NCBI RefSeq assembly: GCF_011386835.1
Contig: NC_088792.1
Span: forward strand, 287,308,001 to 287,372,000
Direction of reading: 5' to 3'
Source: Chrysemys picta bellii
Lineage: Eukaryota
DNA length: 64,000 nt
Positions 1,186 to 37,035 of this stretch are shown piece after piece (within the stretch, counting starts at the first letter, position 1; each line of letters opens with the position of its first letter). The position numbers and the translations under genes are program-made. The notes under the pieces were generated by a model that was not told the origin of the DNA, searched no databases, and saw only the letters and a program-made list of their open reading frames with translations.

Positions 1186-2002
1186 TTTTTTTTTTTAGGA
1201 TCAGAACCCCATTGTGCTGGGGCTTGTACAAACGGCAAGAAAAAGTTCCCACCCCAAAGAGCTTACAAATTAAAACTGGTTTCAGACTCACCCTATAGAA
1301 AGGGGAGAAGTTCCATTTTTAATTATGGTCTGTGGGCCAGGATAGAATTTAGAACTGCATGTGCTTTCCTGAATCCACAGCAACTTCCCACTGACGTGAA
1401 AGGTTAGTTTGCACAGATCAAAGGGAGGAGAGAGTTAATTTACTACAGAAAGGCTATGTTAATATTTGTCAATGCGCCTTGTCACCTTCAGAACCACTCA
1501 GTGGGGAAAAAACTAGCCTTCAGGATTGCCACTATTTCTGCTCTTTGTTTCTCTCCTTGTCCCCATCCTTGGGAGTCTCCTCTCTTCCCCACACAATAAG
1601 TCCCAATTCCACCTCTGCTGTAGACGTCACTCCACCCCACATCCATGTCCCAGCCCAGCCGCTAAAACAATCAGCAGCAAAACAGTGAACTGCTGTCCCT
1701 GAAGCACCCGGAACTAGGCACCCCAGTGAGTACAAGGGCAAGGGCGGTTCACACCTCAAAGCGATTGCTTCAGGCTGTTTGCAGGCTCTGGGACAGCATC
1801 CTTATGCTCGCCATGGTTTCAAGGTTATCGTCACAAACATGGGGACTAAAAACTCAAGTCCCCGCCCACCCTTGAAAGTTTAGATGATGCAGAATCTGAA
1901 TATACTGTAGGCTGCAAACACATGAAGTGGATCAAAATCTGGGGTGTGGGTTTAAGGGCCCAGGTGTTTGAAAGCACTGCAAGGCACCAGGGGAGGACTT
2001 AC

Positions 2003-2197
2003 GTAGTCTTCAAACTTGGTGATCTCCTCCTCCAGTATGTCTGTTCCAATCTTGTCATCCTCCACTACACACTGGATCTGGAGTTTCTTAATACCGTAGC
2101 CCACTGGAACCAACTTGGAGGCTCCCCAAACCAGGCCGTCCATCTGAACGGACCGGACGCACTCCTCCATCTTTGCCATGTCAGTTTCATCGTCCCA
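2003..2197 (-). CDS. EEF1D: EEF1D exon, GEF domain ([16 protein letters not shown]...EITKFEDY)
   Basis: eEF1B GEF-domain sequence; acceptor ttgtgctttgttag, donor TAC|GTAAG; 195 nt, phase 0/0. Confidence 0.97.
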
Positions 2198-3435
2198 CTA
2201 ACAAAGCACAAAAAGGGACCTTAGAAGGTTTACCTACATTAGCATTAGGCTGTGGGACTGTCTGTCGGGACTGAGGACTCTGCAATCCTCAACAGGATCT
2301 TATGTGGTATGTATTCCAATTCCATACATAAGTCAGCAACAAGAGGTTTAACACACTACCGTATAGGGCTGCGATCAGGAAAGCAGCGAGGAGATGCGAG
2401 ATGGAACTCTTCTGTGCTCAGCAGAGAACAAGACTGACAAAATCATGAATTCTACTTGTACCTGCCAATTTGCTAGGCAATGCTCTAGTCAGTGATGCGC
2501 CAGTATTCAGCTCTTCCCACCTAGTTTTGCCATCAGTCTCTGTTAATGAGTCCTTTCTTTGATGAAAGGAGCCTTTCCCAGAGGAATCAAGTTTGACTCT
2601 GCATGAAGCGAGACCAAGTTACTGCAGAAGATCTGGATTCTGCATACCTAAGGGGAAGTGTTCTTGGAATGATGTGTCACTTCTTCCATCTCAGGGTCTC
2701 AGCTTCAAGAACTAACTCTAAGCCCTTGATAGTTGGTAAAACTACTACTTAGCACTTATCTAGTTAGCCCAAAGTGTTGGGTAATCCTATACACCTCTGT
2801 TTCATTGTCCTCTTGAGAGAGTTTGTGCTTTACTGATCATTAATCTGTGCTTGTATTTCAGGCTTTTATTCCCTATGTGTGTGCTCTAACAGGTGCAAGT
2901 TTTGTCAAGGGCTTTTCCACACAGACATCATGCATGGCAAGCCAGGGTGTGAACGTACAAACACTGTAGCCTGCCACACTAAGACTGAAACAGCAGTATG
3001 TCCAAGCGCACTATGGAACTTTTAGTGCGTGGTAGCAGGGCCCACCTGCCCAGATAGTGCACAGCAGGCTAGAGAGCTAAGGATTTACACCCCAGCTTCC
3101 CACACTCTAACTGACCACGTAAATAATCCCCAAGAGAAGATCTTCCAAACCAGGGGTGATCAAACTGCAGCCCACAGAACATCTGCAACTGCCATCTTTA
3201 ATATGGAGCAGAATGGCTCACAGATCCCATCATGCAATGCTCAATGCCGATCCAAACAACTGCATGCTGATAGGTTCTGTAATTTATGCACCAGATCATC
3301 TACACAGGGCAGCTGCAGTCTGCAAGTTAGATGCAACCCACACACTCCTGCAATGTTACAATCATAATCTCAGGACAGGCACCCCACTTCAGAGCCAAAA
3401 CAGTTGTTGTGTAAGGAATAGCTTAAGCTGCTTAC

Positions 3436-3705
3436 AGGCTTGACATCCAGAAGGATGGACGACTTGGCAATGAGGCCAGGCTTTTTAGACTTCTTCTCCG
3501 CATACTGGCGTAGTCGCTCTTCCCGAACTTTGGCAGCCTCCTGGTCTTCCTCTTCATCCCCACTGCCAAATAGGTCAATGTCATCATCCTCATCTTCGTC
3601 GTCAGCCTCAGATGGTCCTACTTTCTTTGCAGGGGGAGCAGAAGGGAGTTCCACTTTCTTTGGGGGAGCAGCAGGTGATTCCACCTTCTTCATTGGGGTG
3701 ACATG
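3436..3705 (-). CDS. EEF1D: EEF1D exon, acidic/CAR region (HVTPMKK...[15 protein letters not shown]...SSILLDVKP)
   Basis: DDDIDLFGS motif and SSILLDVKP; donor CCT|GTAAG; 270 nt, phase 0/0. Confidence 0.95.
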
Positions 3706-4436
3706 CTTCATGGAAGCAATGGGCAAAAGAGGGAGAAAATAAATCCAAGTGTAAAACAAAGCAGCAAACTCCACCCCCCGTCACAGTGATGACCTGACTT
3801 GCCAAAACTAGACTATGCCACCATCCAAAGGCAAGAGCTCAGAGTCATGCAGCCAGGAGCTTGGTGCTTCTATTCCAGGCACTCAATGGCCTGGGCCCAG
3901 CATATCTAAAAGAGCCTAAGTGCCAGGCACATGTCCGCAGGTTGCCTTCGCTAAGCAGCATAGCAACATGTACACTTAAAAATAACCCCCCAAACAAATT
4001 GCTCCAGCGCACAAACAATTCTTCCTGTGGGCAAGGGAGGGAAGAGAGGCGTGAACCACGTTACGTAGGTTAATCTCACTGCTCAGTGCCCTGCTGGAAG
4101 GCACTTTAAGGGTACGTCTCTGCAGCCAAGAAAAACCTGTGGCTGGCCTGTGCAGCCGACTGGCTCGTGGCGCTCAGGCTGCAAGGCATTTTACAGCAAC
4201 GAAACAGCTCCACGAACCACAGTCATCTGGCACATCCAGCCGAGGGTTTAATACTGGTACACTGCGATGATGACTGTGAAGGTTGGTTGAGGTGGAGGAG
4301 TCAGAGGGTGGGAGATTTCCCTTACTGATAAATGATGAACTAGTAATTGGCTGAGCCCTCAAGGGTTAACTCTCTCTCTACACAAGGCAGCAGGACGGAG
4401 GGAGATATGCGCATTTCCCCTTTAAGAACCTGGCCT

Positions 4437-4928
4437 TGTTAATTCTGAGACTGCAGCTGCTGCAAGCTCCCTCCATCCTGAGCCCTGGTGTGTTTCCCCT
4501 GCTCTGTGGAAGATGGGGTAAGCGGAGTGCAGGAGCAGGGGGGAGGGGAACACCCTGACATTAGCCCCCCTTTCCTTCCCTCCCCCCCCGCACAGCAAGC
4601 AGGAGTCTCGGGGAGCAGCTCCAAGGCAGAGGGCAGGAGCAGCACATGGCAGTGGGGGAGGGACAGCTGCAATTGGTAGCCTGCTGGGCAGCTGCTGCAC
4701 AGGGAACTTAGGGGAGCGGGGAGCTGACGGGGGGCTGCCGGTCCACCCTGGTTCCAAGCCCCCACCAGCTAGCTGCAACGGGCTGCTCTTCCTGCAAGCA
4801 GCAGACAAAGCAGGCGGCTGCCAAACAACGTCAGAAGGGAGCATTGCGCAACTTTAAACGAGCATGTTCCCTACTTGATCAGCAACGAAACAACGTTAAT
4901 CTGGACGACTTTACGTGAGGAGTTACTG
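4437..4928 (-). mobile_element. Partial Tc1/mariner (Tigger-like) non-autonomous element
   Basis: Ends ...gtgaggagttactg+TA; reverse complement resembles the left end of the complete element at 29825-30664. Confidence 0.65.
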
Positions 4929-5474
4929 TACGAGTATTTATAGAATACAATACACAGGGGCAAAAGTTAATTCCATTAAAGGTCTCCAATGCATCCTCCA
5001 AACTGGAGCAAGATGCAATGGATACAGGATACTCAGCTCCCAGAGATATTACTTTTTCCTACTCGAGGCAAAGATTCTCACAAGGCTTGTGAGAACCAAT
5101 AGGTCCCCAAGTCTGTCCATCTGTATAGGTCTCTCCTTGCTATATACCTAATAGGTACCAAAACGCTTAGTTTACTTAGTGTGCGCCCATTTATACTCAA
5201 GTGTCAATTACTGGCTTAGCATCACAGATTTTGGTGGACCTCTGCAGATTTGTCCCAGCTGAGGATCTGGCCCATCACATATCCTCTTCACTGGGCCTGA
5301 AGCAGGAGAATCCATGCTCTGCATCTGCACATGGGCTGAGATGAGGACGAAAGAGCAGCTCTAGAAGGCTCTGCTGGGGAGGCCTTGGCTAACACTCGTG
5401 CAGAGATCGCTTTTCTCCTTAGTAGATGGCATGAAGTATTCTAAACGGACCTGGCACCTTGAGGAGTTGATTAC

Positions 5475-5578
5475 CTGGGTTGGCGGCGTTGCTGAGGGAT
5501 GGTGAGAGGTGGAGGATTTTTCTAGCGTGTTCAGGCGAGTTTCCAGCTTGGAGATGGCCAGCTGAAGATCTGCAACAA
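5475..5578 (-). CDS. EEF1D: EEF1D exon (VVADLQLAISKLETRLNTLEKSS...PPTQ), leucine zipper
   Basis: Acceptor tcccttttctag, donor CAG|GTAAT; 104 nt, phase 1/0, matches previous exon. Confidence 0.95.
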
Positions 5579-5866
5579 CTAGAAAAGGGAGAAAGAACTC
5601 TCTCATCTTACTGGTTCAACACATGGCAGAAGATGCAGCAATTCTTTGGTCAGGTCAGGATGAGTTTGCTTTCACTCTAGGCAGGCTACCAAGCAAACTG
5701 CATCTATCCCAACGCGAGAGAAATCCTCGCTCCAACGTTAACAAAACCACCAGCAAAATACACACAATTCACAGGGCTTCACGACATACACTGAGTGGTC
5801 AGCAAGATGTGCCTGCCACTAGCTGCCAAGTCCAATGTGTTTTCTTGCCAGAGATTTCTCACTTAC

Positions 5867-5966
5867 CACTGTGGAGATTTTGGTTCTCCACCTCCAGGTT
5901 AGCTATTCTGGTGACGAGCTCATTTTGGTCACCACCAGGCCCAGCAGAAGAGGTCGTGCTTGCACT
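5867..5966 (-). CDS. EEF1D: EEF1D exon (SASTTSSAGPGGDQNELVTRIANLEVENQNLHS), leucine zipper start
   Basis: Acceptor cccttgttgcag, donor G|GTAAG; 100 nt, phase 0/1. Confidence 0.95.
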
Positions 5967-6456
5967 CTGCAACAAGGGAAACCAAGATGAAAAACTAGCC
6001 TGTTCACTCAGTTCTCAGACTAAGACAGACATGCTGCCTCTCTAAAGCAGGAAGGCAGTAGACAACACTGGGGAAAAAGAACAGATTTTACCGGCTAGCT
6101 AGGAAAGAGCCCTTTTGATCGCAAGCCTTTTAAAGCAAACGTTAAACACAAAAATCAGAATGTAATTCATGTGCCAATTTCTAGTGGAGCTGGCAGGTTC
6201 AGAAGAACACCACATTTCTACAGTCCCAAACTGTGGGCTACCTTAATATTTGCATCTCTAGCATCTTCCAAAGCTTCTCTAGTGCACCTCAAAAAATTTA
6301 CAAACATTACTTACACTAACACCCCTGCTAAGGAGGTGAAGAGCTTCAAATTACAGACAAGGAAACTGAGGTACAGATGGCTGAAGTGACTTAGCTGAGG
6401 TCATTCAGTAAATCAGTGGCAAAGGTAGGAATAGAACATGAGAACATAGAACTAGC

Positions 6457-15215: not shown

Positions 15216-17380
15216 AGTGTAAGGTCCCTAGAATCTCTCACACTCAAAAACCTCAAACATGTTGAAATTTCAACACAGGACTTGAGACTACAGAAAGCCC
15301 CAGCATATGAGAAAGTCAATATACAAACAAGTTATTTGGCTTCTTTGCCACAGAGACCACAACACTATCTTCATAGAAGACTTTTGTTCTGATGCTCCCT
15401 TGGCTTCACTAGCCCTCTTGCCCTGACTCCCCCACCTCTGAGGCTACAGTGCTTGGCTGCCCCAACCCTAGATGCCTCTACGCCCTCCCATCCAAGCCTC
15501 AATTAGATAAAATAGCCTTCTGTAACAAGACTCCCATTCCAGCACAAGTGAAGTTCATCAGGCTGAGGTTGCCCTCTGGGAAACCAGGGGACATTCACCA
15601 AACAGAGAACCTGCCTTCAGAACACAGTTGCAAGCTCCATTTGTCAGGCAAATTTGGATTCAAGATTCCCCCTCCTCTCCCTGCCCACTCTCACCAGGCC
15701 CTCGTTCTTATTACAAGCTGGGGGCATGGAGGGAAAGAGAAAAAAAGGATTTACAATTAATGTTGAGCCTGATCTCCATTAGGAAGCAGCTTCAAAGTCC
15801 ACTCCATTTTCTATTACTATCTGAAAAGCTTTCAAAGCTTATCTTTGATTGCTGGCTGAACTCTCCATAGTCCAGGATGTTTAGGCCTTATTCAAATCTT
15901 CCATCTTAGATTTAAAGATTTATATTGAAAACCCAAGCAGATTACGGAAGATTATAAATTTGCAGGTTATTTCAATGCAGAGTTCCCAGCTTGCCCATGC
16001 CGTTAGCAATTACAGCATCACAAGAGAAGCCGTCAACAGCAGCCTTTCAATCAATGGTCAGACAATTTACTCCCAGCACTACCCTCCTGAGTAGGTTTTT
16101 AAAACGTCAGTTGTTTCCCCTCTTCACTTCCAAAACGTATAAATGCTTTCAGGAACAATTTAGAACGCAAATCTAATCCTTTTCTCTTGTGTTTTCTCCC
16201 TGTTTGCCTGCTGTCCTTGCATCAAATTCCAAGTGACCAATTCTGTGCTGAGCACCTTTGCCCCTGCAAGTGATCTCAGTTATTCTAACACAGAACTAAA
16301 CAGCTGAACTTGACCACAAAAACAGCAGGCCCAAGGAGAGGACCAAGGGAAAAGAAGTTCCTTTCATTCCTGTTTACCTAACAAAGATATTTGGGTCACT
16401 AATCATCTTGTAACAGGCATATTTTGCATTCCAAGTCAATAGCTAGGTACCTTCCTCAGGAGGAATTACTGGGCCACCAATACATAGGGCCAGACACCTA
16501 ATAGTTCTAATTTTGCACTTGTTAAGCATCTTCCATCTGAGGATCTCAATGTTTTACAAATATTGATTTGGCCTTGCGACCTTCCTGTGAGTAGTTGACA
16601 CTATCACCTCCATTTTACAGATGAGAAAACAGGAGGCATATCTTGGATTAGAACCTGGTCACTATCCCTCCTCCCCGCGATAAGTCAGCACAACACCTCT
16701 TAATATGGGATCGAAATTCTGTTCTGAACAATCACCGTGATTATACAGCCAGCTTTGTGACAAACTGATGATGTAGCAGCAGCAAAAAATGCTCCAGCAG
16801 GGGATAGTAGCAATCTATTATAGTAGTGTTCAGAGTTAAAACTAGTAGCCAAGCTGAGTACCCTAGAAACAGTAGATGGAAGATGCCATTTCTTTGCACA
16901 TACCCTAACTGAAAGCCAACAGGAAAGAGAAGGTGGTAGTTCAGTGTACCCCAGTATACAAACATGCCCCTGCTGACAGATATGTGCTCAGCAGGGGTAT
17001 TTTAACTATGGTTAAATTGGTTACCTGTTAGCTAAAGATCATTGGAACCAACTCAAACATTCCACTGGGAGAAAAAGAAATGCATAGCTCTTTGAAGACC
17101 CCACTGAATTTTAGCCCCAGTGCAATAGCCTGTAATTTTAAAGCCATTGTGCTAAGGTAAGCAGTTACACGGCATGCATTTCTGGTAATAGAGGGTGTTC
17201 TTGATAAAATGGAGCTAGTCTGGTGGTACACAGCACTGCACACCTTGTCAATCGCCTCTAACTTAAAATAAGAAGCCACACAATCTATGGAATCAGTCAT
17301 AGTGGAAGAGATCTGTGAGATGCGCCATAACTAAAAATGGACTGCAGGTAGCCAGCTGGTGAGAGAGCTTGGGTACTCAC

Positions 17381-17452
17381 TCCGGCCAGCGATTTCTGGA
17401 TATTCTCCCTGGCTCTGGCAATGTCGCGTAGGATCGTGCTGGCTCCGTTCTC
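17381..17452 (-). CDS. EEF1D: EEF1D exon ([24 protein letters not shown])
   Basis: Nearly identical to human [24 protein letters not shown]; acceptor gtttgcag, donor GGA|GTGAGT; 72 nt. Confidence 0.96.
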
Positions 17453-19575
17453 CTGCAAACAGCGCAGAAAGAACCAAGATGTTTTGTAAAATGAGACATG
17501 AGAAATTGCTGTGAGCAGCTAAGATGGGGAAGATTGGATTTGTTTTTAGCAATGATTAAGTGAGTTTTGGAGGCAGCTTTTCAAGAAGCATCAGCTGGAG
17601 GCATGGAGTGCAATGACCGCAGCTTAGCATTGGTCACGTCATGCTACGCCTCCAGAACAGTGTCCAGTTGCAGAGTTTTGAGACCTCAATATTTTGCTTC
17701 TCCCCACTCTGGTCCCGTGACAGGTTGGCATAGCCATCACTCAGGCAGGTTATCAGGATCACTTTAGTGTGCCCTTGGAGCTCTGGTTAGGCAGCTAATT
17801 TCCTTAAAAGACTATGTGTGAATTTCATGCTGGTGAGAAGTGGCAGAGTCCTGCAGACTAAAATCTTCTATTCCAAGAGTGGGTGTGGTCCAGGCTGTGG
17901 CAGCCCTAGCTTTTCCACATTTATGTGCCACATCCCCAAACGGGAGGGTCCACACCTCCTGGGGCGAGAGTTCAGTTTCCAGGGTCCAAGTACTCCTTGG
18001 CTCTCTGAGACTACCAATCAGGGCACCAATTATAGCTGTGGTTTCTGTGACAGATTCCTGTCCACTGGAAACTGGACTGAGCACCAAAATTCATTTCACA
18101 CTGGGCACCAAATCAGCCCCAAATAATCCCACACTAGCATGGCACTTCCAAATTTGATGCAAATAAAAAAAAAAGTTTACTGAAGACTCCTAAACCTTAC
18201 TAGGAAGGGAGTGTTGTAATAAACAACTCTAAGTTTCAGTCAGTTGGGTTTCAGGCCACTTCTGGCAGGTAAAATTACCTTCTTCACTGAAAGTTGTGTG
18301 TGTCATGTGATATTCTAATTATTCCCCTTTCTACTACACACAGCACAGTTGTGCTTTAGAATCTGCTTTAATGTTTTACTTACAACTTCCAATTTTTGTA
18401 GACCTACTGTAGGAACATCTGCCCTTCAAATAAATGTTGTACAGAGCTTTGTGCTACCGCTATGGTAGCATAGCCAGCAGAAATTCAGCAGAACATGCCT
18501 AGAAGCTACTAAAGCATTGACCGTTGTTTAAAAGCTCGGCCCTGCCACTTGCAAAACAGCCATGTAAGATTTCAAGCCGCTTTCTATGGAATTAAATGCA
18601 TATGCAGTTAACCATCCTTTACATTTTAGGATGGGAGCATCACTGCTCCCTACAATCTTACTCCAGTTGTGGGGGTGCAGATACCTCAGGAATGTAAGTG
18701 TGAGCCACCCTGAGGACTTTATGTTGGAACTGGCGTTTGCTTTCCCTGCTCTTCCCCCACCATAGCCTCCACTGCTCTGGTGCAGACAAGTAATATATAC
18801 AGCATTCCCTGCGGCCTCCTGTTAACATTACAGGGAAGCCAGAAAGGGAACGTGGGTCACAATCTCTCTGGAGTGTTAGCACCACTATACTCCCGTCATG
18901 CACTCGGTCTCTAGGATGTGCCTGGCAAAAAAACAACTTGGACACTCCTGAACACTGGCTCCCTGGAAAAATAGGAAATTGCTAGATATCGTAATAGCTC
19001 ACGTAGGTCAGTCCTTAGCATAACTTCCCATCCTCCCATATTACCTCAACATTTGTTCTCAGATCTTGTGAATGGGATATAAAATTGCTCGCTGATAGGT
19101 CACAGACCCTATTTGTGGCCCTGTCACAGGTAGGGCGCAAGTAACCTGAAGGATTAAGAAAAGACCAATTCTTGTAAACTATAACCCAGGTTTTCCCCCA
19201 TTTCTATTTCACCCCATTCACAAAGTTGAACCTCCTCTTGTACATGGGCAAATCAGCTTCAGCTACACCTATATTTTGAACACTGTGGTTCTCACACTAT
19301 AGCCTGTGGAACACTGGAGGGGTTTGATGCAATTATTTGTGGTCCACAGGACAAAACGTTTTGAAAACCAAACAGGGAATTTGGTGACAGGACCTGAGTC
19401 TCCAAGAGAGGATATCTTACTAATTCTCCTAGTCTGGAGACCAATTTGTAACAGACCTTAACAAATACATACAGGTGGGAAGGGTCATTCTTTCACCTGC
19501 TATCGGTACTGGGAGATCCTTAGACTCTAGCACGCTGCAAAAACGACTTCCTTACTACTTGAGGATATGCATTAC

Positions 19576-19699
19576 CTGTTGGCATGAAGGACTGGCAACT
19601 GGCCCATTCATCTGTTCATAGTATCTCTTCTCAGCATCGTCATACTTGAATTTATCAAACCAGATCTTCTCATGCATAAGAAAATCAGCTGCCATTTTT
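19576..19699 (-). CDS. EEF1D: EEF1D exon carrying the short-isoform start (ATG at 19695; [22 protein letters not shown]...CQQ)
   Basis: Matches human [22 protein letters not shown]; acceptor tttgcag|AAAAATG keeps frame with the long exon; donor CAG|GTAAT. Confidence 0.96.
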
Positions 19700-20360
19700 C
19701 TGCAAATAGGAAGACACAATATGAGCACCTAGGAATATTTAAGGTTAGCTGCCTGTATCAGGTTCATCAGATTTCCCTCCTTCCTCCCCCACAGAACTGC
19801 ATTGTAGCTTTCTGCCCTTTATCTTCCTTCCCCTCTGGTGAAAAGCTTTAAGTAAATGGGATCCTATTAAGAAAGCAGGGCATTCTAATCATCCATCCAC
19901 CTGTCTGCCTGATCTGACCTGCATTTAGCAACACAGCGTGAAGCGGGGGCTGTACATGTTGGACAGTCTGCACCTTCCCCTGTATAAATGCCAGCTCCAC
20001 CAGGATATATAGATCAAAATGTCAGACACTTCAAAATCCACACAAGTCAATTAATACAATGGTTTAAAAAATGGACAGAATCGCACCTGTTTTGGCTCAT
20101 GTACAGAGACTTTTTTTTTTTTAAATATGCCTAGCCAACCTTAGCAACTAATAGCACTAAACTCCTTAACATAGCTTTTAGCTCAACACAGAGTGGAGGA
20201 CACAGTGTTTTAGTCACATTACAACTATGTTAGGAAGCAGTGTTAAAACAGTAATGGGGAGCAAGTTGAGCACACCGTTCTATTGCATACTATCTTAAAC
20301 AGATTTCAGCCCTGCCCACACCTGAATCAGAACTGTGCTGCTCCAACCAAGCTATCTTTA

Positions 20361-20996
20361 CTTCTGGGGGAATTCTGCGCCACTGCGCAATGCAGAATTT
20401 TGCAGAAATTAACACTGTGCACGCAGAATTGCTATTCGACCACAGAAATGGGCTGCAGTGCTGCTAGTCACCACTAGGGGCCACTGGATTCAGCAGAGCC
20501 CAGCTTGCACATAGAAGACACCACTGGGGGAGGGAGCTAGAGGGTTCCCGGCAGCTGCAGTTCCCAGCATGCTCTGAGGGAAGGAGAGGGTGGGGCGCAG
20601 GAAACTCCACGCAAGCCTGGGATCAAGCATCAGGCTGTTTCTCCCTTTGGATCCCTGGGTTTTGGTGGAGGAGGGGTGTCTGGGCAAGGGGGGGAGGGGT
20701 TATGGGTGTCTGGCCCCCCCGGCTGGGTTCTGAGTGTGTGTGGGGGAGGAAGGGGGCAGAGAAACAGGAATTTGGTTGTCATAGTGATTTCTTTAACTCT
20801 CTACTCCGGGGGGAATTTTTGTGAGTGTCCATATTGTTATACATATGCTTGCTGACAGGTATTTTGATATAAATTACCAAATAATTGAAAGTGGCCTGAT
20901 TACATACAGTGTTATTTTGACAAATAACATTTGTAGAATTTTAAAATATTATGTGCACAATTTTTTCATTTTTGGGGCACAGAATGCCCCCAGGAG
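20361..20996. mobile_element. TA-flanked MITE (Tc1/mariner-like)
   Basis: Imperfect TIR ta-cttctgggggaattctgcgcc / ggcacagaatgcccccaggag-ta. Confidence 0.6.
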
Positions 20997-23516
20997 TAGA
21001 TGGGCAATGCATCACTGGGTGTGCTGCAGAACGAGATTACCCAGTCCTCCTGGATAAAGCCATAATAGTACGTGGCATGACAAACAAACAAAACAAAAAT
21101 ACTAGAAGCGTGTCTCCTTTCAAATCAAGAACCACAAAAAGTATTTCAGAAGATGGCATACGGAGGAGTGGAAGATGGACCTGCAGGGGTGTACTTTCAG
21201 AAAAGACCCTGTAGTCATTTAGAAAGTAAACTGTTACACCGTTGGAGAGAGATCCTTCCCATTGTGCTAGTCAGAAATCACGAGATTCCGCCCCATGTGG
21301 GAGGATAAGGAGGATGTTCTAAAATGCACATGGGTTCTAAAATGGCTATGAAAGTAGGCCAACCTACTACTTTGTATGTGGTAACAATGAATTCAGAGGC
21401 AAAGGGGCTAATTTAATATGGGCGTGCAGTTAAACAGCTTCCAAAGGCTATTTAACTTCATGGTGTATTGCGGGATGGGACTATTACAAGAACCTAACAT
21501 GGAGGATATACAGTTATTTCAAAGCAAGGGCCCGGTACAGGAGCCTAGGACAAAAGGTCAGTTTGAGGGGGTAAGAAGAGACAAGAAAGGAGAATCTCAA
21601 TGAAGCAATTACAAGGCCCTGTTGTGAGAAGTGTAAGCAGGGACATAGCAACTAAGGAATATCAGCTTACGTAAAGGGCATTTAAAGATCTTTTAGGAAA
21701 AGTTTACACCACTCAAATGCCCTAAGGCAAGGACCATAACTTCAAGAATCAGCCTAGACCTTTCCAAGCCCTACAAATCCTCCAAAAAAACACCGCCAGA
21801 TCTCAACACTGGTTAACTAAGTAATGCTTTGTACTATCCGGTTGTAAAAAACATCTCAGTATCAACACCGACCCATTCAGAAAAGCAGAGAAGGATCAAG
21901 AGAGACTGCTACAGAACCATTTCCAAATTCTGCAACCCCTTCCCAAGGTTCACATCATTCCTGCAAGAGACTGCCAGAAATGCTGTCCATATACACAAGC
22001 CAGTTTACTACACACAATCCTAATCATGAACAGGCCAATTAATCACACACTGAACATTTTGTACTGATGCAATCTTCATTTCATGGGGAGAGATTCTCCT
22101 TACTCCATCTGGCCACAGAGAATGCTATTCAAACTCAAGGGTCTCCTCAAAGAGGGAGAAAGGAAGATCTAGTCTCTGAAAATTGTATTTATTGCTGGGC
22201 TACAAAAGAGCACTTAAGTACTGGCCTTTAAACAAATCCACTGAAGAGCTACAGCTCAGAAGGTAATGTGGCCTCTGAACGTTAGAGAAGTTTTGGGTTC
22301 AGCAAGTAGAATGCAATTATGTAAAATCAAAATACAAACTGCATTGTTTCATGTACAGTGGAACAAAAATGCTGTTGTGTACTCACCCAAGAGAGGCAGC
22401 TTTCAAATATTTCCAGCCTTTAAACAAACTTAGACTGTTCTAATTAGACTAATCGCAGGGGCGATAACTATGGATATTTTCTACATTTTAAAAATGCATC
22501 TCCTCTCCCAGCTCCAATGTTTGTTCATTGGATTTGTTATAATCTAGTTCACCTTCCCTTACATGCCCAGATTAAACACCCACTTTTAGACAAAATGGCT
22601 TATCAGATTACCTTCCCTCAATTGTTCAGAGGAAGCACCTGTGGTCTCCAGATTGAAACTTTGGGCCTATTTTACAGTCAAATGGCATCTTTCATCCTGA
22701 AGGATCCCAAAGCTCCTCTACAAACTGAATATATACAGTGACACAAAAAAGCATCCATTTCTCAGGGGAAGCCAGTGGAAAACCTACATATAACAACCTC
22801 TAGGAAAATGTTGGTCAAAGTCACCGGAACAAATTCCTTCTCTTGTGAAGAATGTAACGGGATCTTTAATACTCATGCACTGCAAACACAATATCCATTC
22901 GAAAGGTCTAATCCAAAAAACCAAACAAACAAAAAAGCTCCTGCAAAACCTGCCTAAAATTCAGTTTATGAACCTCAGAATGATGAGGGGCTAAGTGGTC
23001 TGTACCACCCCCAGAGCAATGTTTAGACGATACAGTCATCCCCTCCACCTTTCTACCGGTAAAGCACCTTGGGATTAAAGGCTCTGTGCAAGAAATGAGT
23101 GGCCTGAGCACAGGACTGGGAATCAGATCTCCCAAGTCAAGAGTTCTAACCCCTCCTTTGACTTCAGTGCTGTGTGATCTTGAGCAAGTTATCGAACTTG
23201 TCTGGCTCCAGCTATAAAATGACAATAACTTAACTACCGACCTCCTAGGGGTGTTTGAGGATTAATTACAACTCATCATAACAGTGAGCTACCTTAAAAA
23301 AGAGGGCCCTCTTCAAAAACCCTGCTGGTAAAGTGAAGCCTGATTAAGGTTAAACAGGACCTTTGGCTCAATGACTGGAGGTTATGTCTATAGCGCCAGT
23401 GTTGTGTTTGGCACTACAGACCCACATTGCCTTCTACATATGCCAATTATTACAGCTCAATGCTGAACCATCAATTTTCCGAGTTTGAGTGTTACCCCAG
23501 AATAAGCTTTTCCTAC

Positions 23517-24790
23517 TTAGTTTCTGAAGCAGGCACGCTTGTGGCACGAGAAGCAGGTCGAGATGGTTTTGCTAGCGTGAGTTCTGGAACCCTTGCATTA
23601 TCTTGTCTGCTCGACATTTTCAGGGCCTCAGATGCATAGTATCGTGATTCAGCGCTGTCGTATGTGGGTTTACTAAGCCACAAATGCTCACTGTCCTTGT
23701 GCAGGAAATACCAGGTAGGCGGAGGGTGCTCGGCATCTTTAGGAAGGGAAGGGTTGGTGGTGAACTCCACATGTCGGGAATTCATTCGTTTCCCGGGACT
23801 GCGGCCCTTCTTGTCCTTTCGGCTGCTCTTTGAGGCTTCTGGACGGCTGCGCTCTTGTGGCCTCACCTTCCCTGGAGGATGCCCATCAGTCATGTTCTCG
23901 TAGAAGCTTTTCTCAGCATCATCATAAATAGGTTTCTCCAGCCACACCTCCGAAATCAATGCCTGCAAGCTCAATATCTGAGGCTTGCCATTTATTGTCT
24001 GGTGTGCAGGACTGGGCAAACTGGTAACAAAAGAGGCACCAGAATGAACCACAACATCTGTTGACAGGCATGGTGTAGCAGGGGTTGCAGGAGTAGATAG
24101 AGCTGTTATATACCCTTCATCTGGAGTTCTTTGATCAACATCACCATAGTCACTGTTCCATCGTACCGATGGAAGATCTAGGAAGTGTGGATGAACAAAA
24201 GATTGAGACCTTTCAACAAACACCTTCTCTGCCTCATCAAAGTTGAACTTGTTGACCCAGACATCCTGGATGACATGGTGACAAGCAATCAGACCGGCAT
24301 GGGTGCAGTGCAAGGCTGCTAGGTTCTTCCTTGGCTTATGAACACCTGGGACAGCTTCTTCTGACCAGGACACTAATGCTGGCTGCTCAGCAGCCGGTTC
24401 AGTTTCAGGGGCCTTCTGGGTCAGGTCATCTGCAAGTTTCTTTCTGAACAGGTTTTCAGCATGATCGAAGAAAGGTTTGTCAAACCACACGCCATCAGCT
24501 AATAAACCAGTCAGGACAAAATCTACCTTGGAGACCAAACTCTTGGTTTTTGGAGAACGCTTCCTTTTCTTTTGCTTCTTCCCATTTTTCACTCTTTTCA
24601 TGTCTTTCAATTCGCCCTCGACAGGATCATCATGGCAAACACTGTTCATTGCCTCCACCTCTTGGCCCTTTTCAGTGGCGGAGGCTGCCAACGTGGCTTC
24701 TCTTTCATAGTGGAGCCTCTCCGCTTCATCATACTGGTGCTTGTCCAACCAGACCTTTTCCAGTGGGTACGGGAGCTTCCTTGTCCTCAT
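23517..24790 (-). CDS. EEF1D: EEF1D long-isoform (eEF1B-delta-L) N-terminal exon, 424 codons
   Basis: MRTRKLPYPLEKVWLDKHQYDEAE resembles human MRSGKASCTLETVWEDKHKYEEAE; NLS KKQKKRKR; donor AA|GTAGG joins in frame to 19699 (..SETKKMAADF). The ORF-track start at 24898 is intronic. Predicted long form about 725 aa, short form about 299 aa (both without the 72-nt cassette). Confidence 0.93.
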
Positions 24791-26168
24791 CTTCCAAAGA
24801 GTGGCAGCATTAAAAGATAAGCACAGTAATGTAGTTGCAACATAACTAAACAAGCCACTGGCATACATTAGATTTGAGCCATTTCTTAAGCATTGCAAAG
24901 TTTATATAAAAACCCACCACTCAGTCATGACTAATATATTAAGAAATGGTGCTTTGGGAATCTAATTCAATTTCCATTTCATTGTTTACACATTTCAGTG
25001 AGAAGGAATTAAGTTGTCCGCATGTTTAATTCAAGTTAAAAAAATTGATCTATTTCTCTGTAAAGCACCTTTTTAATTAAGTTATCTGCATCCACGTTCA
25101 CATTTGGTCTGGTCAGACCTGTATTAAGTCCTCAAAAACTAGAGCTATAGGGCTGTAAATGTAGTTCACATTTTACACTATAAGGCACACTTGTCAGTCG
25201 TGCAGGCCAAACTTGAATCCTTTTCAAAGTTTTATGGTATAGTGGAGGGACTTTCCAAATCATCGCTTGTTAAGCACCACCAATGTGCTAACTAGATACC
25301 CTTAAACCGGTATTTTTGGAAAACTTGCTTTTTAAAAAAAAAATTTGCTACTCATGAAGATCTTTTTGTAGACACTGCCAATACAGGACATGCTGTATTG
25401 TACTTGACTGCTATAAAACCAGCAGAGGGAGCAAAGGAAACTATTTCCAGAGCTGCACAAAGTTAGCTGAGATAGGGGATGCTTATGCATTTTTTCATAA
25501 AATATGCTCTTGAAGATGAATTTGGCTTCCTTTAACTGAAGGCGTTTTCCTTCATAGGATGTGCACCCATTATTAGGTTGGAGTAAGGTTATGTGTTAGT
25601 AATGGGCTCCTGGCTTTCTTGGAAACCATGAATATCTCAAATATATTTTGAGCTAACAAACTTTGACACTCACTGGATTTCAGTTAAAAATCAATTACTG
25701 CCAAATGGAAAGGAAAAGAGTTTAAGAGGGTGTCTCAGGGTTCATATATATTAACCTTCATTATCTGCGACAAGCTTATTTTAAACACAGCTATTTTCGA
25801 AAGATCTGCCTATAACTTTAAGCTAGACTTTGTTAAATGCTATTGTTTCACATTTAAATCAACTGAAATATCCCATACAAAGGAAGAGGCATAAATGTTG
25901 CATTTGATTGGTGTGAAAGTCTTGTGCTTTAAATATTGTTTATAATCCACTATGAAGTCAAATTTAGCTTCCAGGATATCAAAATGATCAAACATGATAT
26001 TGGAGAGATTTTCCTAACTGCAGGATTTATAGCAGTGTTCAGAAATCCGGGTAATGGTTAGCTACTAAGTTTCAAGATAGTAAATTAGTAAAAGAGTAAG
26101 TGCGTTGAATTATGCACAAATCCAATTTAAAATTAAGTAGCTGAAAAGTCAGTTCCCTCTTTGCTTAC

Positions 26169-30664: not shown

Positions 30665-32513
30665 TACAATCACCTTATAAGCCTTTATCATGCTCCCTAA
30701 ATTAAATATGGTTATTAGTTTCTTATGCATTTCATTCATCGTAACTATTCTAGGAGCCACTAGTATTATGTACAAAATGTTTCTATGATTATAAAAATAT
30801 GTGCACAGACTAGACAAGAAAAGTGCAAAAATGTGTGCTCTTGCTGCACAGGTTGGATACTGGCTTTTGTATTATCCATACCACTGAAACATAACAGGCA
30901 GCAACTTAAATGGTGGCACAAAGCGTACCAGCTATTTGTAAGACTTAAAACATCAAAAAGGCAATGGTATTATCTGTGTTGATCAATACATAGTTATCAA
31001 CCTCCCTCACCCAGTGTAAAGTTACATAGGACAAAGCAGTGAAAACTTCCCATAACCAACATATAAGCAACCATCTAAAAGCCCTCTAAGTTTCAACAAT
31101 TTCTAATTGAATATGCATAGTTGGTCAGCTACATTTTCAGTTTCTGCTTATCATCACTTCTTGGATGTCACAAACAAAAATTGGATTTCCAATGATACAG
31201 GGGAATGCGTTGTTAAAAATGTGATGAAAACATTTATATCAGTGTTTCATAAAACCCAAAATAAGATTTGGGCTTAAGCTTTTTAACTGTATTATTACTT
31301 TTTTTTTTAAACGAAGGGAACACTTTTTCCACAGCAGCTGTTGTTTCTGAAGGGAAATGTCAGCTGCTTTTCAAAATCCACAATCTTAAACAGTGCAAGA
31401 TTACCAATGAGTTCACCGCATCTCCCTACAGTAGAGCCCATCGATAATGAAATAGAAGACAAATCACAAATAGCTTCATTGCCACATAATATTAAAATTG
31501 TCATTCTGATTCTTTACAAAATGCAACTTTATGATGAGGTGGTTCCCACTGCATGTGTTCTGTAATATTTTTTGCAGCTCTCGGCATCTACATGCCATCA
31601 TTCTGGATGTAAATCTGTTTATACTGTTTGGCATCACTGAACTAGACAAAGCCAACAAGGATTATGTATAGAGTACTCTCACACTATCTCACATGTCACA
31701 TCCATCCCCCAACAGAATCTACTGAAAACTAATCCCAGCAACAGCAAGGAAAATAAATGTCAACTACAAGTGAAAACCCAGAGTGGAAAGAGAAATTTGG
31801 TAGTTAGTTCAATTATGTGCACATAAGCAAGAATCACTTTAGTTAAGCATTTGATCTCACTAATGAAATTACCAATCCAGCTACCTACAGTACTTTTTGT
31901 GGGAAGATTGTGGAGTGTTTCAAGACATAACTGAGCAAAAGGATTGCCAGTCAGCCAACAAAATGACAGTTGGGACCTCCCAACTAGGATTCCTTGAACC
32001 CTTGACATCTGCCCCCAGGTGATTAGCAACCAATAAGCAGCACCTAAAGTCACTCAGCTAATAAGTGCAGAAAAGCAAGTCTGAAGATACCTGTCACTGG
32101 GAAAGAAAGGCTCCATTTGCTCCTCCAGACAAGTGTGTAGTACTGCAGAAAATCAGTCGGGAAAGGATAAGAAATAAGTTAAGAAAAAATATATCAACTA
32201 GTATCAGAGAATGAACAGAATAGCAAGTGGGGGAGAGGAGAAAAGTATACCTGTAACGGAAAGGAGCAAAGCCAGGCAGAGGAAAAGAATATGTACCTGA
32301 AAAGAAAAGCAGAAGTGAGCAAGGAGGCACATAGGGTGCATAACCAGAGAAGGTAATAAAGAACATCTGGCCAAGCCAAGCAACTCAATGGTATTCTCCC
32401 TGTCTGTAACAGGATAGACTTTTGAATGCTGCATCCAATCAATTCCAAAATCAGGGAATGTTTTAGGCATCAATGAGCAGAACCCTATCGATTTTGGTGC
32501 AAATCAGAAAGCC

Positions 32514-32531
32514 GGGGGGGGGGGGGGGGGG
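32514..32531 (+). repeat. Poly-G run (18 G)
   Basis: Directly visible. Confidence 0.9.
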
Positions 32532-33764
32532 AGGGGCAACACAACCCCTTGCATTTAGTTAGCAGAACCTGCAGTTTTAACCACATCTGTAATTGTCTAC
32601 AGACGTACATGCCAGAAGATAGCAGCCATTATTTGGCGGGGGGGAGGGAGGAGAGAGAAGGCCAGGAATCCCTGAAAGAGGAGGAATTGGAAGATGGAAC
32701 ACAAGGAGCTTATGAAAGGAATGGAAAATGTAAGGAGCCCCTTATGCATGCAATGCACTCAGATTACAGATGCAACAAACCATGCGACTCTCTAGGTAAT
32801 AACTATGGTTATGACCAGAATAAATCCCAACAGAGATTATGGAGTCAGACTGCTAAACATCAACAGAAAGTACAAGAACAGCAGCATAATCCTGTGAGGT
32901 TCAGGACAGCCTGAACTGTTAGAGCTAAAAGGAAGTTAGGGATGATCAGTAGCTTGCTGGATCAGGCCATCTCTTAGGGAGTGCTCAAGGATACTCCATG
33001 GCAGATGGGCCTATCACCAGGGAGCTAAAGTACCTAGATAAGAAGACCCATCAGATTTTCCCTGCCTTTGGTTTTTCAGTGGAGAGAGCCTCAAGTGCCA
33101 GCAGAAGTTACCAGACTGAGAGCTGCTGAAAAGTGAGTCAGCACCACAGAGTTCACCCCCCCCCATCTTTGGGCTGCTGGCATACAGGACAGAGCTCCCT
33201 GATTGTGAGGGGAGCAGCAGGCAAACAAACTGATGCTCACAGTGGGGGTGCAGGGAGACAGGAGGATTCTTTGGAGGACCCCCCTATAAGCGTTCCTGGA
33301 ACCACCTGCATCCACAGCGGAGCTCCTCAGCCATGAGGGAAGCACAGGCTGGTAGTGGGGGGAAGGAGCTTTGGGAGGCTCACCTATCATCCCCCCAGGA
33401 CCTTGCTCACAGCAGTCATGGGGGGGGGGGGGGGAGGATTCTTCTGAGCAATAGAGTCCCTGCCGCCACTCGCTATCATCCCCCTCCCCCACAGGGTACC
33501 GGCACCACAGCAGGGCTCCCTGGCTATGGGGGGAGCATATGATAAGCAGGATGGTGGACAGGGGCCGGCATCAGGGGAAGCACAGAGACACAGAATCCCT
33601 GCCCCCCCCCCCCAACCAGAAACACCTGCCCACAGCAGGGCTCGCCCCCTGTAAGAGAAGCGGGGACGGCTCATGGGGAGGAAAGGATCCTTGGGGGCAC
33701 AGAGGAATCCAGATGAGGTCCCTGCCCCCCACGGGCCACCCCTCCAAACCACCAGCATCCCCTG

Positions 33765-34018
33765 GGGGTCCCTGCCCCCCCCACCTCCCGCCGGCCCCCA
33801 GCACCCCCGGGAGGTCCCTGCCCCCCCCCACCTCCCGCCGGCCCCCAGCACCCCCGGGGGGGAGGTCCCTGCCCCCCCCCCACCTCCCGCCGGCCCCCAG
33901 CACCCCCGGGAGGTCCCTGCCCCCCCCACCTCCCGCCGGCCCCCAGCACCCCCGGGGGGGAGGTCCCTGCCCCCCCCACCTCCCGCCGGCCCCCAGCACC
34001 CCCGGGAGGTCCCTGCCC
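33765..34018. repeat. GC-rich minisatellite, 46-51 bp unit, 5 full copies plus a partial one
   Basis: Unit gaggtccctg-Cn-acctcccgccggcccccagcacccccggg(ggg), starting near 33765, 33811, 33862, 33910, 33960 and 34006. Confidence 0.95.
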
Positions 34019-34019
34019 A

Positions 34020-37035
<3,016 letters not shown>

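What the first reader, a model, noticed from the sequence alone, without database searches (positions are those of the whole stretch)
19630..24751. Long EEF1D carries six copies of the eEF1B-gamma-binding-type motif W-x-x-K-x-x-[YF]-D-x-A-E
Seen: the long exon encodes VWLDKHQYDEAE (24751-24719), VWFDKPFFDHAE (24487-24455), VWVNKFNFDEAE (24259-24227), VWLEKPIYDDAE (23944-23912) and LWLSKPTYDSAE (23680-23648). Each matches [12 protein letters not shown] (19662-19630) at the short-isoform N-terminus. The Trp residues lie 67-105 aa apart, separated by poorly conserved linkers. Established: the N-terminal helix of short eEF1B-delta binds the GST-like domain of eEF1B-gamma. Inference: the long exon arose by serial duplication of this docking module, so eEF1B-delta-L may be a multivalent scaffold for up to six GST-fold partners. 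That is a different reading from its usual description as a nuclear stress-response factor.
Basis: partly seen in the sequence, partly recalled or inferred. Interest (0 to 1): 0.7.

Follow-up and report, generated by a model that had tools for sequence, protein, structure and literature searches.

The report
Six EEF1G-docking helices in long EEF1D
The brain/testis-type long form of the translation factor EEF1D, here in a turtle, carries five extra copies of the short helix that the ordinary form uses to bind its partner EEF1G; each copy has been kept since the origin of vertebrates, which points to a multi-site docking scaffold that I found described in no searchable paper and that nobody has tested.

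Summary
W-x-x-K-x-x-[YF]-D-x-A-E occurs six times in the window, all in EEF1D (minus strand), at the stated coordinates. Shuffles expect 0.005 matches.

Five copies lie in the 1274-nt alternative exon (24790-23517). RNA contigs show this exon spliced exactly to the exon that holds copy 6.

Copy 6 is the known EEF1G-binding helix (PDB 5JPO; HDX protection of residues 11-29; E22R and Y26E break binding). For each extra copy, the 5JPO peptide is the best PDB sequence match. All 15 profile-profile comparisons between copies align in register.

The copies are orthologous one-for-one from shark and paddlefish to amniotes, and four copies occur in hagfish. The long exon is therefore pan-vertebrate, not amniote-only as a review states.

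Motif windows are twice as conserved as the rest (0.51 against 0.25 identity, p about 1e-12). AlphaFold2 predicts five isolated helices in a disordered chain.

Serial duplication of the docking module is well supported. Multivalent EEF1G binding is plausible but untested. Copies 2 and 3 lack the Tyr26 equivalent, and each copy keeps its own conserved signature. I found no paper describing the repeats.

The parts
23517..24790 (-). Long alternative EEF1D exon. It runs from the start codon at 24790 to the donor after 23517 and encodes the 424-aa extension of the long isoform.
   Evidence: It is an open frame with 94% identity to tortoise EEF1D isoform X2. RNA contigs of 4 runs cover exactly 23517-24790. 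The joint 23517 to 19699 has GT..AG ends on the minus strand.
24704..24760 (-). Copy R1, 19-aa unit (core W..E at 24719-24751).
   Evidence: PDB top hit is 5jpo_E at E=7e-4. AF2 helix 10-37. The Tyr26 equivalent is Tyr/His.
24440..24496 (-). Copy R2 (core 24455-24487).
   Evidence: 5jpo_E is the top hit at E=0.4. AF2 helix 105-125. The Tyr26 equivalent is Gln/Arg.
24212..24268 (-). Copy R3 (core 24227-24259).
   Evidence: 5jpo_E is the top hit at E=0.09. AF2 helix 181-195. The Tyr26 equivalent is Val/Met.
23897..23953 (-). Copy R4 (core 23912-23944). It is the best conserved copy and the one closest to R6.
   Evidence: 5jpo_E is the top hit at E=0.003. hhalign R4-R6 gives 98.6%. AF2 helix 286-302. 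Tyr is kept in 18 of 19 species.
23633..23689 (-). Copy R5 (core 23648-23680).
   Evidence: 5jpo_E is the top hit at E=0.39. AF2 helix 374-398 has the highest pLDDT, 93 for the block of residues 381-390.
19615..19671 (-). Copy R6 (core 19630-19662), the known EEF1G-binding helix at the short-isoform N-terminus.
   Evidence: phmmer against 5jpo_E gives E=6.5e-14. Literature.
19576..19699 (-). Exon carrying the short-isoform start codon (ATG at 19695) and R6.
24548..24580 (-). Basic nuclear localisation signal between R1 and R2.
   Evidence: It is conserved. The NLS is described in PMC4346937.
24275..24307 (-). Conserved C-x-H-x5-C-H-H block just upstream of R3.
24071..24127 (-). TPDEGY...TPATP block, the most conserved non-motif segment.
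2000..5969 (-). Downstream EEF1D exons for the leucine zipper, acidic region and GNE domain: 5868-5969, 5469-5579, 3436-3708 and 2000-2197.
   Evidence: tblastn of the tortoise protein. Pfam PF10587 and PF00736 on homologs.
32094..32114 (-). Part of the 5'UTR exon that RNA contigs join both to the long exon and to the short-form exon.
   Evidence: Loose ends at 24790 and 19702, located in the window.

Best explanation
The long EEF1D exon is an intrinsically disordered chain that carries five paralogous copies of the roughly 19-residue amphipathic helix E-x-[VI]-W-[LFV]-[DEN]-K-x-x-[YF]-D-x-A-E-x-x-[FYH]-x-E. The sixth copy, shared with the short isoform, is the helix that sits in the cleft of the EEF1G GST-like domain next to the glutathione site.

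Shown:
- The copies arose by duplication of that docking helix before vertebrates radiated.
- Each copy has since been kept under purifying selection on one helical face. That face includes the Glu22 equivalent in all copies and the Tyr26 equivalent in copies 1, 4, 5 and 6.

Inferred:
- At least copies 1, 4 and 5 dock a GST-fold domain of the EEF1 machinery. EEF1G is the most likely partner, and the GST-like domain of valyl-tRNA synthetase is possible.
- One long EEF1D chain, which also self-associates through its leucine zipper, would then tether several EEF1G-containing units.
- This would explain why over-expressing the long form lowers bulk translation and why deleting it raises translation.
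- It would also let glutathione redox state and Lys381 ubiquitylation gate the release of the long form for its nuclear role.
For: Occurrence and expression:
- Six exact motif matches, against 0.005 expected.
- The exon is transcribed and spliced in frame to the R6 exon.

Homology to the docking helix:
- R6 matches the 5JPO peptide.
- Each of R1-R5 has that peptide as its best match among 177,635 PDB sequences.
- hhalign aligns 15 of 15 copy pairs in register at 94-98.6% probability.

Conservation:
- 101 of 104 units are nearest to the same copy index in another species.
- Copies are present in hagfish, shark, paddlefish, amphibians, teleost eef1db, monotreme, primate and sauropsids.
- Motif identity is 0.51 against 0.25 for the rest, Mann-Whitney p=8e-13. 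All six motif windows are among the eight most conserved 17-mers.
- The conserved positions fall on one helical face (moment 0.26 at 272 degrees, P=0.026). That face holds the E22 and Y26 equivalents.

Structure prediction:
- AF2 gives isolated helices at exactly the five motifs and a disordered rest.
- In R2-R5 the helices start at the Lys (W+3). This is where the EEF1G-bound helix 14-28 starts.

Literature:
- E22R and Y26E in EEF1D, and R14E in EEF1G, break binding. GSSG displaces EEF1D.
- HDX protection of residues 11-29.
- Long-form over-expression inhibits protein synthesis and knock-out increases it (PMC6176097).
Against: - There are no binding data for any extension copy.
- Copies 2 and 3 carry Gln/Arg and Val/Met at the Tyr26 position.
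- Each copy has a conserved private signature, for example Asn at W+2 in R3 and Pro at W+4 in R2, R4 and R5. This may mean different partners.
- Residues 1-367 of the human long form are reported to bind RNF20/40, p-TEFb, HSF1 and HSE DNA, not EEF1G (PMC6451099).
- Teleosts have lost some copies.
- The E-values of single copies against 5jpo_E are weak for R2, R3 and R5 (0.09-0.4).
Confidence: 0.55

Rival explanations
1. The copies are duplicates of the EEF1G-docking helix that have since specialised. Each now recruits a different partner, for example the VARS1 GST-like domain, HSF1, NRF2, RNF20/40, p-TEFb or transcriptional co-activators. They may also act as acidic-aromatic activation-type helices. 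Under this reading the long form is a hub for nuclear factors rather than a multi-EEF1G scaffold.
For: - Copy-specific signatures are conserved across vertebrates.
- The Tyr26 equivalent is replaced in R2 and R3.
- The N-terminal region binds RNF20/40, p-TEFb and HSF1.
- The VARS site on EEF1D is unmapped.
- The NLS lies inside the array.
Against: - The residues shared by all six copies are the ones on the face that contacts EEF1G, including Glu22.
- R4 is nearly as close to R6 as orthologous R6 copies are to one another.
- The N-terminal region alone is reported not to activate transcription.
Confidence: 0.27
2. The extra helices are intramolecular pseudo-ligands or structural elements. They would pack on one another, on the leucine zipper or on the GNE domain, or they would compete with R6, so as to auto-regulate the long isoform rather than to recruit extra partners.
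For: Repeated amphipathic helices can form bundles. Over-expression of the long form inhibits translation, which auto-inhibited GEF activity could also explain.
Against: - AF2 gives no packing: pTM 0.18, mean pLDDT 55, helices isolated in disorder.
- The linkers of 50-90 residues vary in length and sequence. This is typical of independent linear motifs.
- PAE was not available, and only the extension was folded.
Confidence: 0.1
3. The repeats are relics with no present function, conserved only because of constraint from something else, for example exonic splicing signals.
For: None specific.
Against: - Conservation is at the protein level and on one helical face.
- It holds over more than 450 million years and in every vertebrate class sampled.
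- Conservation exceeds that of the flanking coding sequence in the same exon.
Confidence: 0.03

Closest known systems
EEF1G-binding N-terminal helix of eEF1B-delta (PDB 5JPO chain E; EEF1D residues about 11-29)
   Same: It has the same 19-residue signature and the same predicted helix start. Glu22 is kept in all copies and Tyr26 in copies 1, 4 and 5. Copy 6 of the array is this very element.
   Different: It is known only as a single N-terminal copy. Here there are five further internal copies in a disordered alternative exon, two of them without the Tyr, and their binding is untested.
eEF1B-delta-L, the long brain/testis EEF1D isoform described as a heat-shock-response transcription factor
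   Same: It is the same gene, the same alternative exon and the same NLS. The human, chimp and turtle extensions align end to end.
   Different: The published descriptions I could search list only an NLS, a 'zipper-like' region and a basic region. One paper calls residues 181-367 free of any identified motif. The repeat array is not mentioned. The isoform is said to be amniote-specific, whereas homologous exons occur down to hagfish.
GST-fold assemblies of the translation apparatus (EEF1G with the EEF1B2 N-domain, 5DQS; the MARS1-EEF1E1-EPRS1-AIMP2 GST tetramer of the multi-synthetase complex)
   Same: GST-like domains are used as protein-protein glue for translation factors.
   Different: Those contacts are domain to domain. 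Here the ligand is a short helix in the cleft near the glutathione site, and it is repeated along one chain.
Arrays of short linear motifs in disordered scaffolds (for example the Trp motifs of GW182, the DPF/NPF repeats of Eps15, the LxxLL repeats of co-activators)
   Same: Short amphipathic or aromatic motifs are spaced by variable disordered linkers, and multivalency gives avidity. This comparison rests on my own knowledge.
   Different: There is no sequence relation. The units here are longer (19 aa) and each is individually orthologous across vertebrates.

Membership tests
EEF1G-binding helix of eEF1B-delta (5JPO type) | Sequence similarity to the crystallised EEF1D 1-30 peptide | tested here: met
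   5jpo_E is the top PDB hit for all five extension copies, with E=7e-4, 0.4, 0.09, 0.003 and 0.39. hhalign against the R6 profile gives 97.1-98.6% probability.
EEF1G-binding helix of eEF1B-delta (5JPO type) | Glu22 equivalent (E22R abolishes EEF1G binding) | tested here: met
   Glu sits at position W+10 in 100 of 104 units from 19 vertebrates and in all six turtle copies.
EEF1G-binding helix of eEF1B-delta (5JPO type) | Tyr26 equivalent (Y26E abolishes binding), copies R1, R4 and R5 | tested here: met
   Position W+14 is Tyr/His in R1 (12 of 14), Tyr in R4 (18 of 19) and Tyr/His in R5 (15 of 19).
EEF1G-binding helix of eEF1B-delta (5JPO type) | Tyr26 equivalent, copies R2 and R3 | tested here: not met
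   R2 has Gln/Arg/His and R3 has Val/Met/Ile/Leu at W+14. The aromatic residue at W+13 is kept.
EEF1G-binding helix of eEF1B-delta (5JPO type) | Alpha-helix beginning near Asp14/Lys15 | tested here: met
   AF2 helices are 10-37, 105-125, 181-195, 286-302 and 374-398. In R2-R5 they start at the Lys (W+3); the R1 helix starts four residues before the Trp. This is a prediction only.
EEF1G-binding helix of eEF1B-delta (5JPO type) | Physical binding to the EEF1G GST-like domain | not testable with these tools
   No multimer prediction or binding assay is available here, and no published data were found.
eEF1B-delta-L long isoform | Alternative exon upstream of the short-form start codon, spliced in frame, with its own ATG | tested here: met
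   RNA contig joint 23517 to 19699 (GT..AG). The same 5'UTR exon is joined either at 24790 or at about 19700.
eEF1B-delta-L long isoform | NLS in the extension, plus leucine zipper and GNE domain downstream | tested here: met
   NLS at aa 71-81. Downstream exons map to the tortoise full-length protein, which carries PF10587 and PF00736.
eEF1B-delta-L long isoform | Brain/testis-restricted expression and HSE-dependent transcription | not tested
   The tissues of the coded RNA runs are not known, and there is no functional assay.
Folded tandem-repeat (solenoid or bundle) domain | Repeats pack into a compact fold | tested here: not met
   AF2 gives pTM 0.18, and 196 of 424 residues have pLDDT below 50. 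The helices are isolated. Linkers vary in length.

The most novel reading that the evidence does not exclude
Long EEF1D may be a redox- and ubiquitin-gated multivalent tether. Its six helices (up to 18 per leucine-zipper trimer) would hold dimeric EEF1G GST domains in large cytoplasmic assemblies and would keep the NLS between copies 1 and 2 masked. Oxidised glutathione in the EEF1G G-site is already shown to eject the R6 helix. Together with RNF20/40 ubiquitylation of the invariant motif Lys of copy 6 (K381), it would release the chain. That release would simultaneously free EEF1G-EEF1B2-EEF1A units and send long EEF1D to the nucleus to drive HSE/ARE genes with HSF1 and NRF2. This system would be conserved since the first vertebrates.
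Probability: 0.15. Interest if true: 0.85.

Novelty: new variant of a known kind. Interest (0 to 1): 0.62.

Why it matters
The long EEF1D isoform is mutated in human neurodevelopmental disorders, and its deletion causes seizures in mice. Yet its 360-420-residue extension is treated in the literature I could search as nearly featureless.

Seeing the extension as an ancient array of the EEF1G-docking helix does three things:
- It gives the region a concrete, mutable anatomy: six Trp/Lys/Glu/Tyr faces.
- It offers a direct mechanism for the isoform's effect on bulk translation.
- It links the region to the newly described glutathione sensing by EEF1G.

It also turns an open question, what the long form does in neurons and testis, into simple binding and stoichiometry experiments. 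Finally, it moves the origin of the isoform from amniotes back to the vertebrate stem.

Tried and rejected
- Pfam scan of the extension found 0 families at E up to 1.
- ESM Atlas feature search with the R4 segment failed. The window sequence was not held and the machine was busy. The tortoise homolog gave no usable hit once EEF1D/EEF1B2 families were skipped. I therefore have no evidence for the motif in other protein families.
- Literature searches for any description of repeats in EEF1D found none. The original EMBO Rep 2011 paper is not held.
- I looked for published EEF1G interaction data for the long form in PMC4250081, PMC6176097, PMC8623629 and PMC7841112. None exist there beyond speculation.
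- I rejected a folded repeat domain because of the AF2 result.
- I rejected chance and low-complexity explanations because of the shuffles.
A chimpanzee protein representative (P0131) was used only in local alignments and for residue numbering.
Full report
**What is there**

The window is from a turtle. The best protein match to the extension is Chelonoidis abingdonii EEF1D isoform X2 at 94% identity. EEF1D lies on the minus strand.

A 461-codon open frame contains the long alternative exon. Its ATG is at 24790 and a GT donor follows 23517, which gives a 424-residue extension.

The next exon (19699-19576) carries the short-isoform start codon and the known N-terminal helix. Downstream exons for the leucine zipper, acidic region and GNE domain map at 5969-2000.

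Transcriptome contigs from four public runs cover exactly 23517-24790. In two of them the contig jumps from 23517 to 19699, with GT..AG ends on the minus strand. The same upstream 5'UTR exon, located near 32094, is joined either to 24790 or to about 19700. Both isoforms are therefore made in this species.

**The observation**

Shuffled windows give 0.005 matches on average.

The quoted 12-letter strings include one residue more than the coordinates cover. The spacing of 67-105 residues is correct.

**Extent of the repeat**

Pooling 104 units from 19 vertebrates gives the consensus E-x-[VI]-W-[LFV]-[DEN]-K-x-x-[YF]-D-x-A-E-x-x-[FYH]-x-E.

Profile-profile comparison of the six copies aligns every one of the 15 pairs in register over 22-28 columns, at 94-98.6% probability. 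R4-R6 is the closest pair. The windows were centred on the motif, so register is partly given. The scores are not.

tblastn independently picked up R1 against the R6 exon at E=4e-4. It also found a one-repeat-shifted alignment of the extension on itself.

**Relation to the known docking helix**

Copy 6 matches chain E of PDB 5JPO, the EEF1D 1-30 peptide crystallised with the EEF1G GST-like domain, at E=6.5e-14. Three lines of literature define this helix as an EEF1G ligand:
- HDX-MS shows that only residues 11-29 of the subunit gain protection on EEF1G binding (PMC9458455).
- A 2025 preprint places helix 14-28 in the EEF1G cleft next to the glutathione site. It shows that E22R and Y26E in EEF1D, and R14E in EEF1G, strongly reduce binding. 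It also shows that oxidised glutathione displaces EEF1D (10.1101/2025.10.13.682107).
- Deletion of residues 1-28 is used as the 'EEF1G-binding domain' deletion (PMC13231004).

For each of the five extension copies, a phmmer search of all PDB sequences returns 5jpo_E as the first hit. The E-values are 7e-4, 0.4, 0.09, 0.003 and 0.39. They are weak singly for three copies, but the result is unanimous.

**Conservation and age**

All six copies are present in 106 of 120 sauropsid homologs, and each has its own signature.

A profile of 15 sauropsid extensions was searched against 1.84 billion representatives and found 52 proteins. Every one that carries a name is a vertebrate EEF1D:
- hagfish (four copies)
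- a shark cluster that includes Rhincodon (five)
- paddlefish (six)
- a frog and a newt
- teleost eef1db (two to four)
- platypus
- chimpanzee (six)
- mouse, trout and birds

The long exon with its repeats therefore predates the cyclostome-gnathostome split. This contradicts the review statement that the long form arose in the reptile-to-mammal lineage (PMC4346937).

In a 19-species alignment, the 17-residue motif windows keep 0.51 identity to the turtle among non-sauropsids, against 0.25 for the rest (Mann-Whitney p=8e-13). All six motif windows are among the eight most conserved 17-mers. The other two are the TPDEGY...TPATP block and the NLS.

For 101 of 104 units, the nearest unit in another species has the same copy index. 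The duplications are therefore ancient, and each copy has been kept individually.

**Structure**

AlphaFold2 on a 39-sequence alignment gives a mostly disordered chain (mean pLDDT 55, pTM 0.18). It has helices at 10-37, 105-125, 181-195, 286-302 and 374-398. These are the five motifs, and they hold the highest-confidence blocks (82-93), except R3 (65-67), in an otherwise low-confidence chain.

In R2-R5 the helices begin at the Lys (W+3), as does the EEF1G-bound helix 14-28. The R1 helix begins four residues before the Trp.

The information content of the pooled units is concentrated on one helical face (moment 0.26 at 272 degrees, P=0.026). That face holds K(+3), [YF](+6), D(+7), A(+9), E(+10), [FYH](+13) and position +14.

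The Glu22 equivalent is essentially invariant. The Tyr26 equivalent is Tyr/His in R1, R4, R5 and R6. It is Gln/Arg in R2 and Val/Met in R3.

**Interpretation**

Serial duplication of the EEF1G-docking helix is well supported.

The anatomy is that of an array of linear docking motifs: short conserved amphipathic helices, variable disordered linkers, and the contact residues retained.

My best reading, at about 55%, is that at least R1, R4 and R5 bind a GST-fold domain of the EEF1 machinery, most likely EEF1G. This would make the long isoform multivalent. That fits the report that over-expressing the long form lowers basal protein synthesis and that knocking it out raises protein synthesis in brain (PMC6176097).

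No binding data exist, and several points count against the reading:
- The copy-specific signatures and the altered Tyr position in R2 and R3 leave real room for specialised partners.
- The N-terminal region is reported to bind RNF20/40, p-TEFb, HSF1 and HSE DNA (PMC6451099).
- The VARS site on EEF1D is unmapped.

**A link worth noting**

Human long EEF1D has 647 residues. In the chimpanzee representative, the human-type start lies at residue 42 and the copy-6 Trp at 419. In human-type numbering this puts the Trp at 378 and the invariant motif Lys at 381.

Lys381 is the residue that RNF20/40 monoubiquitylates to boost heat-shock transcription.

Together with GSSG-driven release of the R6 helix from EEF1G, this suggests a switch between an EEF1G-bound state and a nuclear state. 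This is inference only.

**Novelty**

No paper in the searchable library describes these repeats. [quoted passage not shown] The reviews list only an NLS, a zipper-like region and a basic region. Pfam has no model for the extension.

The element itself is a known kind. The array, its age and its implication are, as far as I could find, undescribed.

**Limits**

- There is no multimer modelling and there are no coordinates of 5JPO, so contacts beyond E22 and Y26 are taken from papers.
- The species of several 'eef1db' records were truncated in the output.
- The tissues of the RNA runs are coded.
- The founding 2011 paper could not be read.

Noticed in passing
window 24275-24307 (-): A C-x-H-x5-C-H-H block lies immediately upstream of copy R3. 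The A-C-H-H part is nearly invariant from bony fishes to amniotes but is changed in the shark. It may be a metal-binding or redox-sensitive site.
   Followed up: partly
window 24071-24127 (-): TPDEGY...TPATP is the most conserved non-motif block of the extension (0.59 identity in non-sauropsids). It holds several Thr-Pro sites, which suggests proline-directed phosphorylation.
   Followed up: partly
proteins P0169, P0141, P0132, P0134, P0127: Homologs of the long exon occur in hagfish, shark, paddlefish, frog and newt. This contradicts the published statement that the long isoform is confined to amniotes. In teleosts it sits in the eef1db paralog and has lost copies.
   Followed up: yes
copy R6, window 19651-19653 (-), the motif Lys: The invariant Lys of copy 6 corresponds to human long-form K381, the RNF20/40 monoubiquitylation site. 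This was derived from the chimp numbering and from the 647-residue length given in the paper.
   Followed up: partly
window 24029: All four RNA runs read G where the window has A on the plus strand. This is the third codon position of residue 254 and is probably a polymorphism or an assembly difference.
   Followed up: no
window 17351-17461 (-): This segment matches an alternative exon present in the softshell-turtle and emu isoforms but absent from the tortoise isoform used as reference. It may be the counterpart of the KTN1-binding exon 5 of mammals.
   Followed up: no
I did not examine it.
   Followed up: no
window 24790-24900: One RNA contig (run X7) reads through the exon's upstream boundary to 24900 instead of joining the 5'UTR exon. 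This is either unspliced RNA or an alternative upstream boundary.
   Followed up: no
window 32000-38000: A very GC-rich stretch (up to 74%) adjoins the 5'UTR exon at about 32094. It is likely the EEF1D CpG-island promoter.
   Followed up: no
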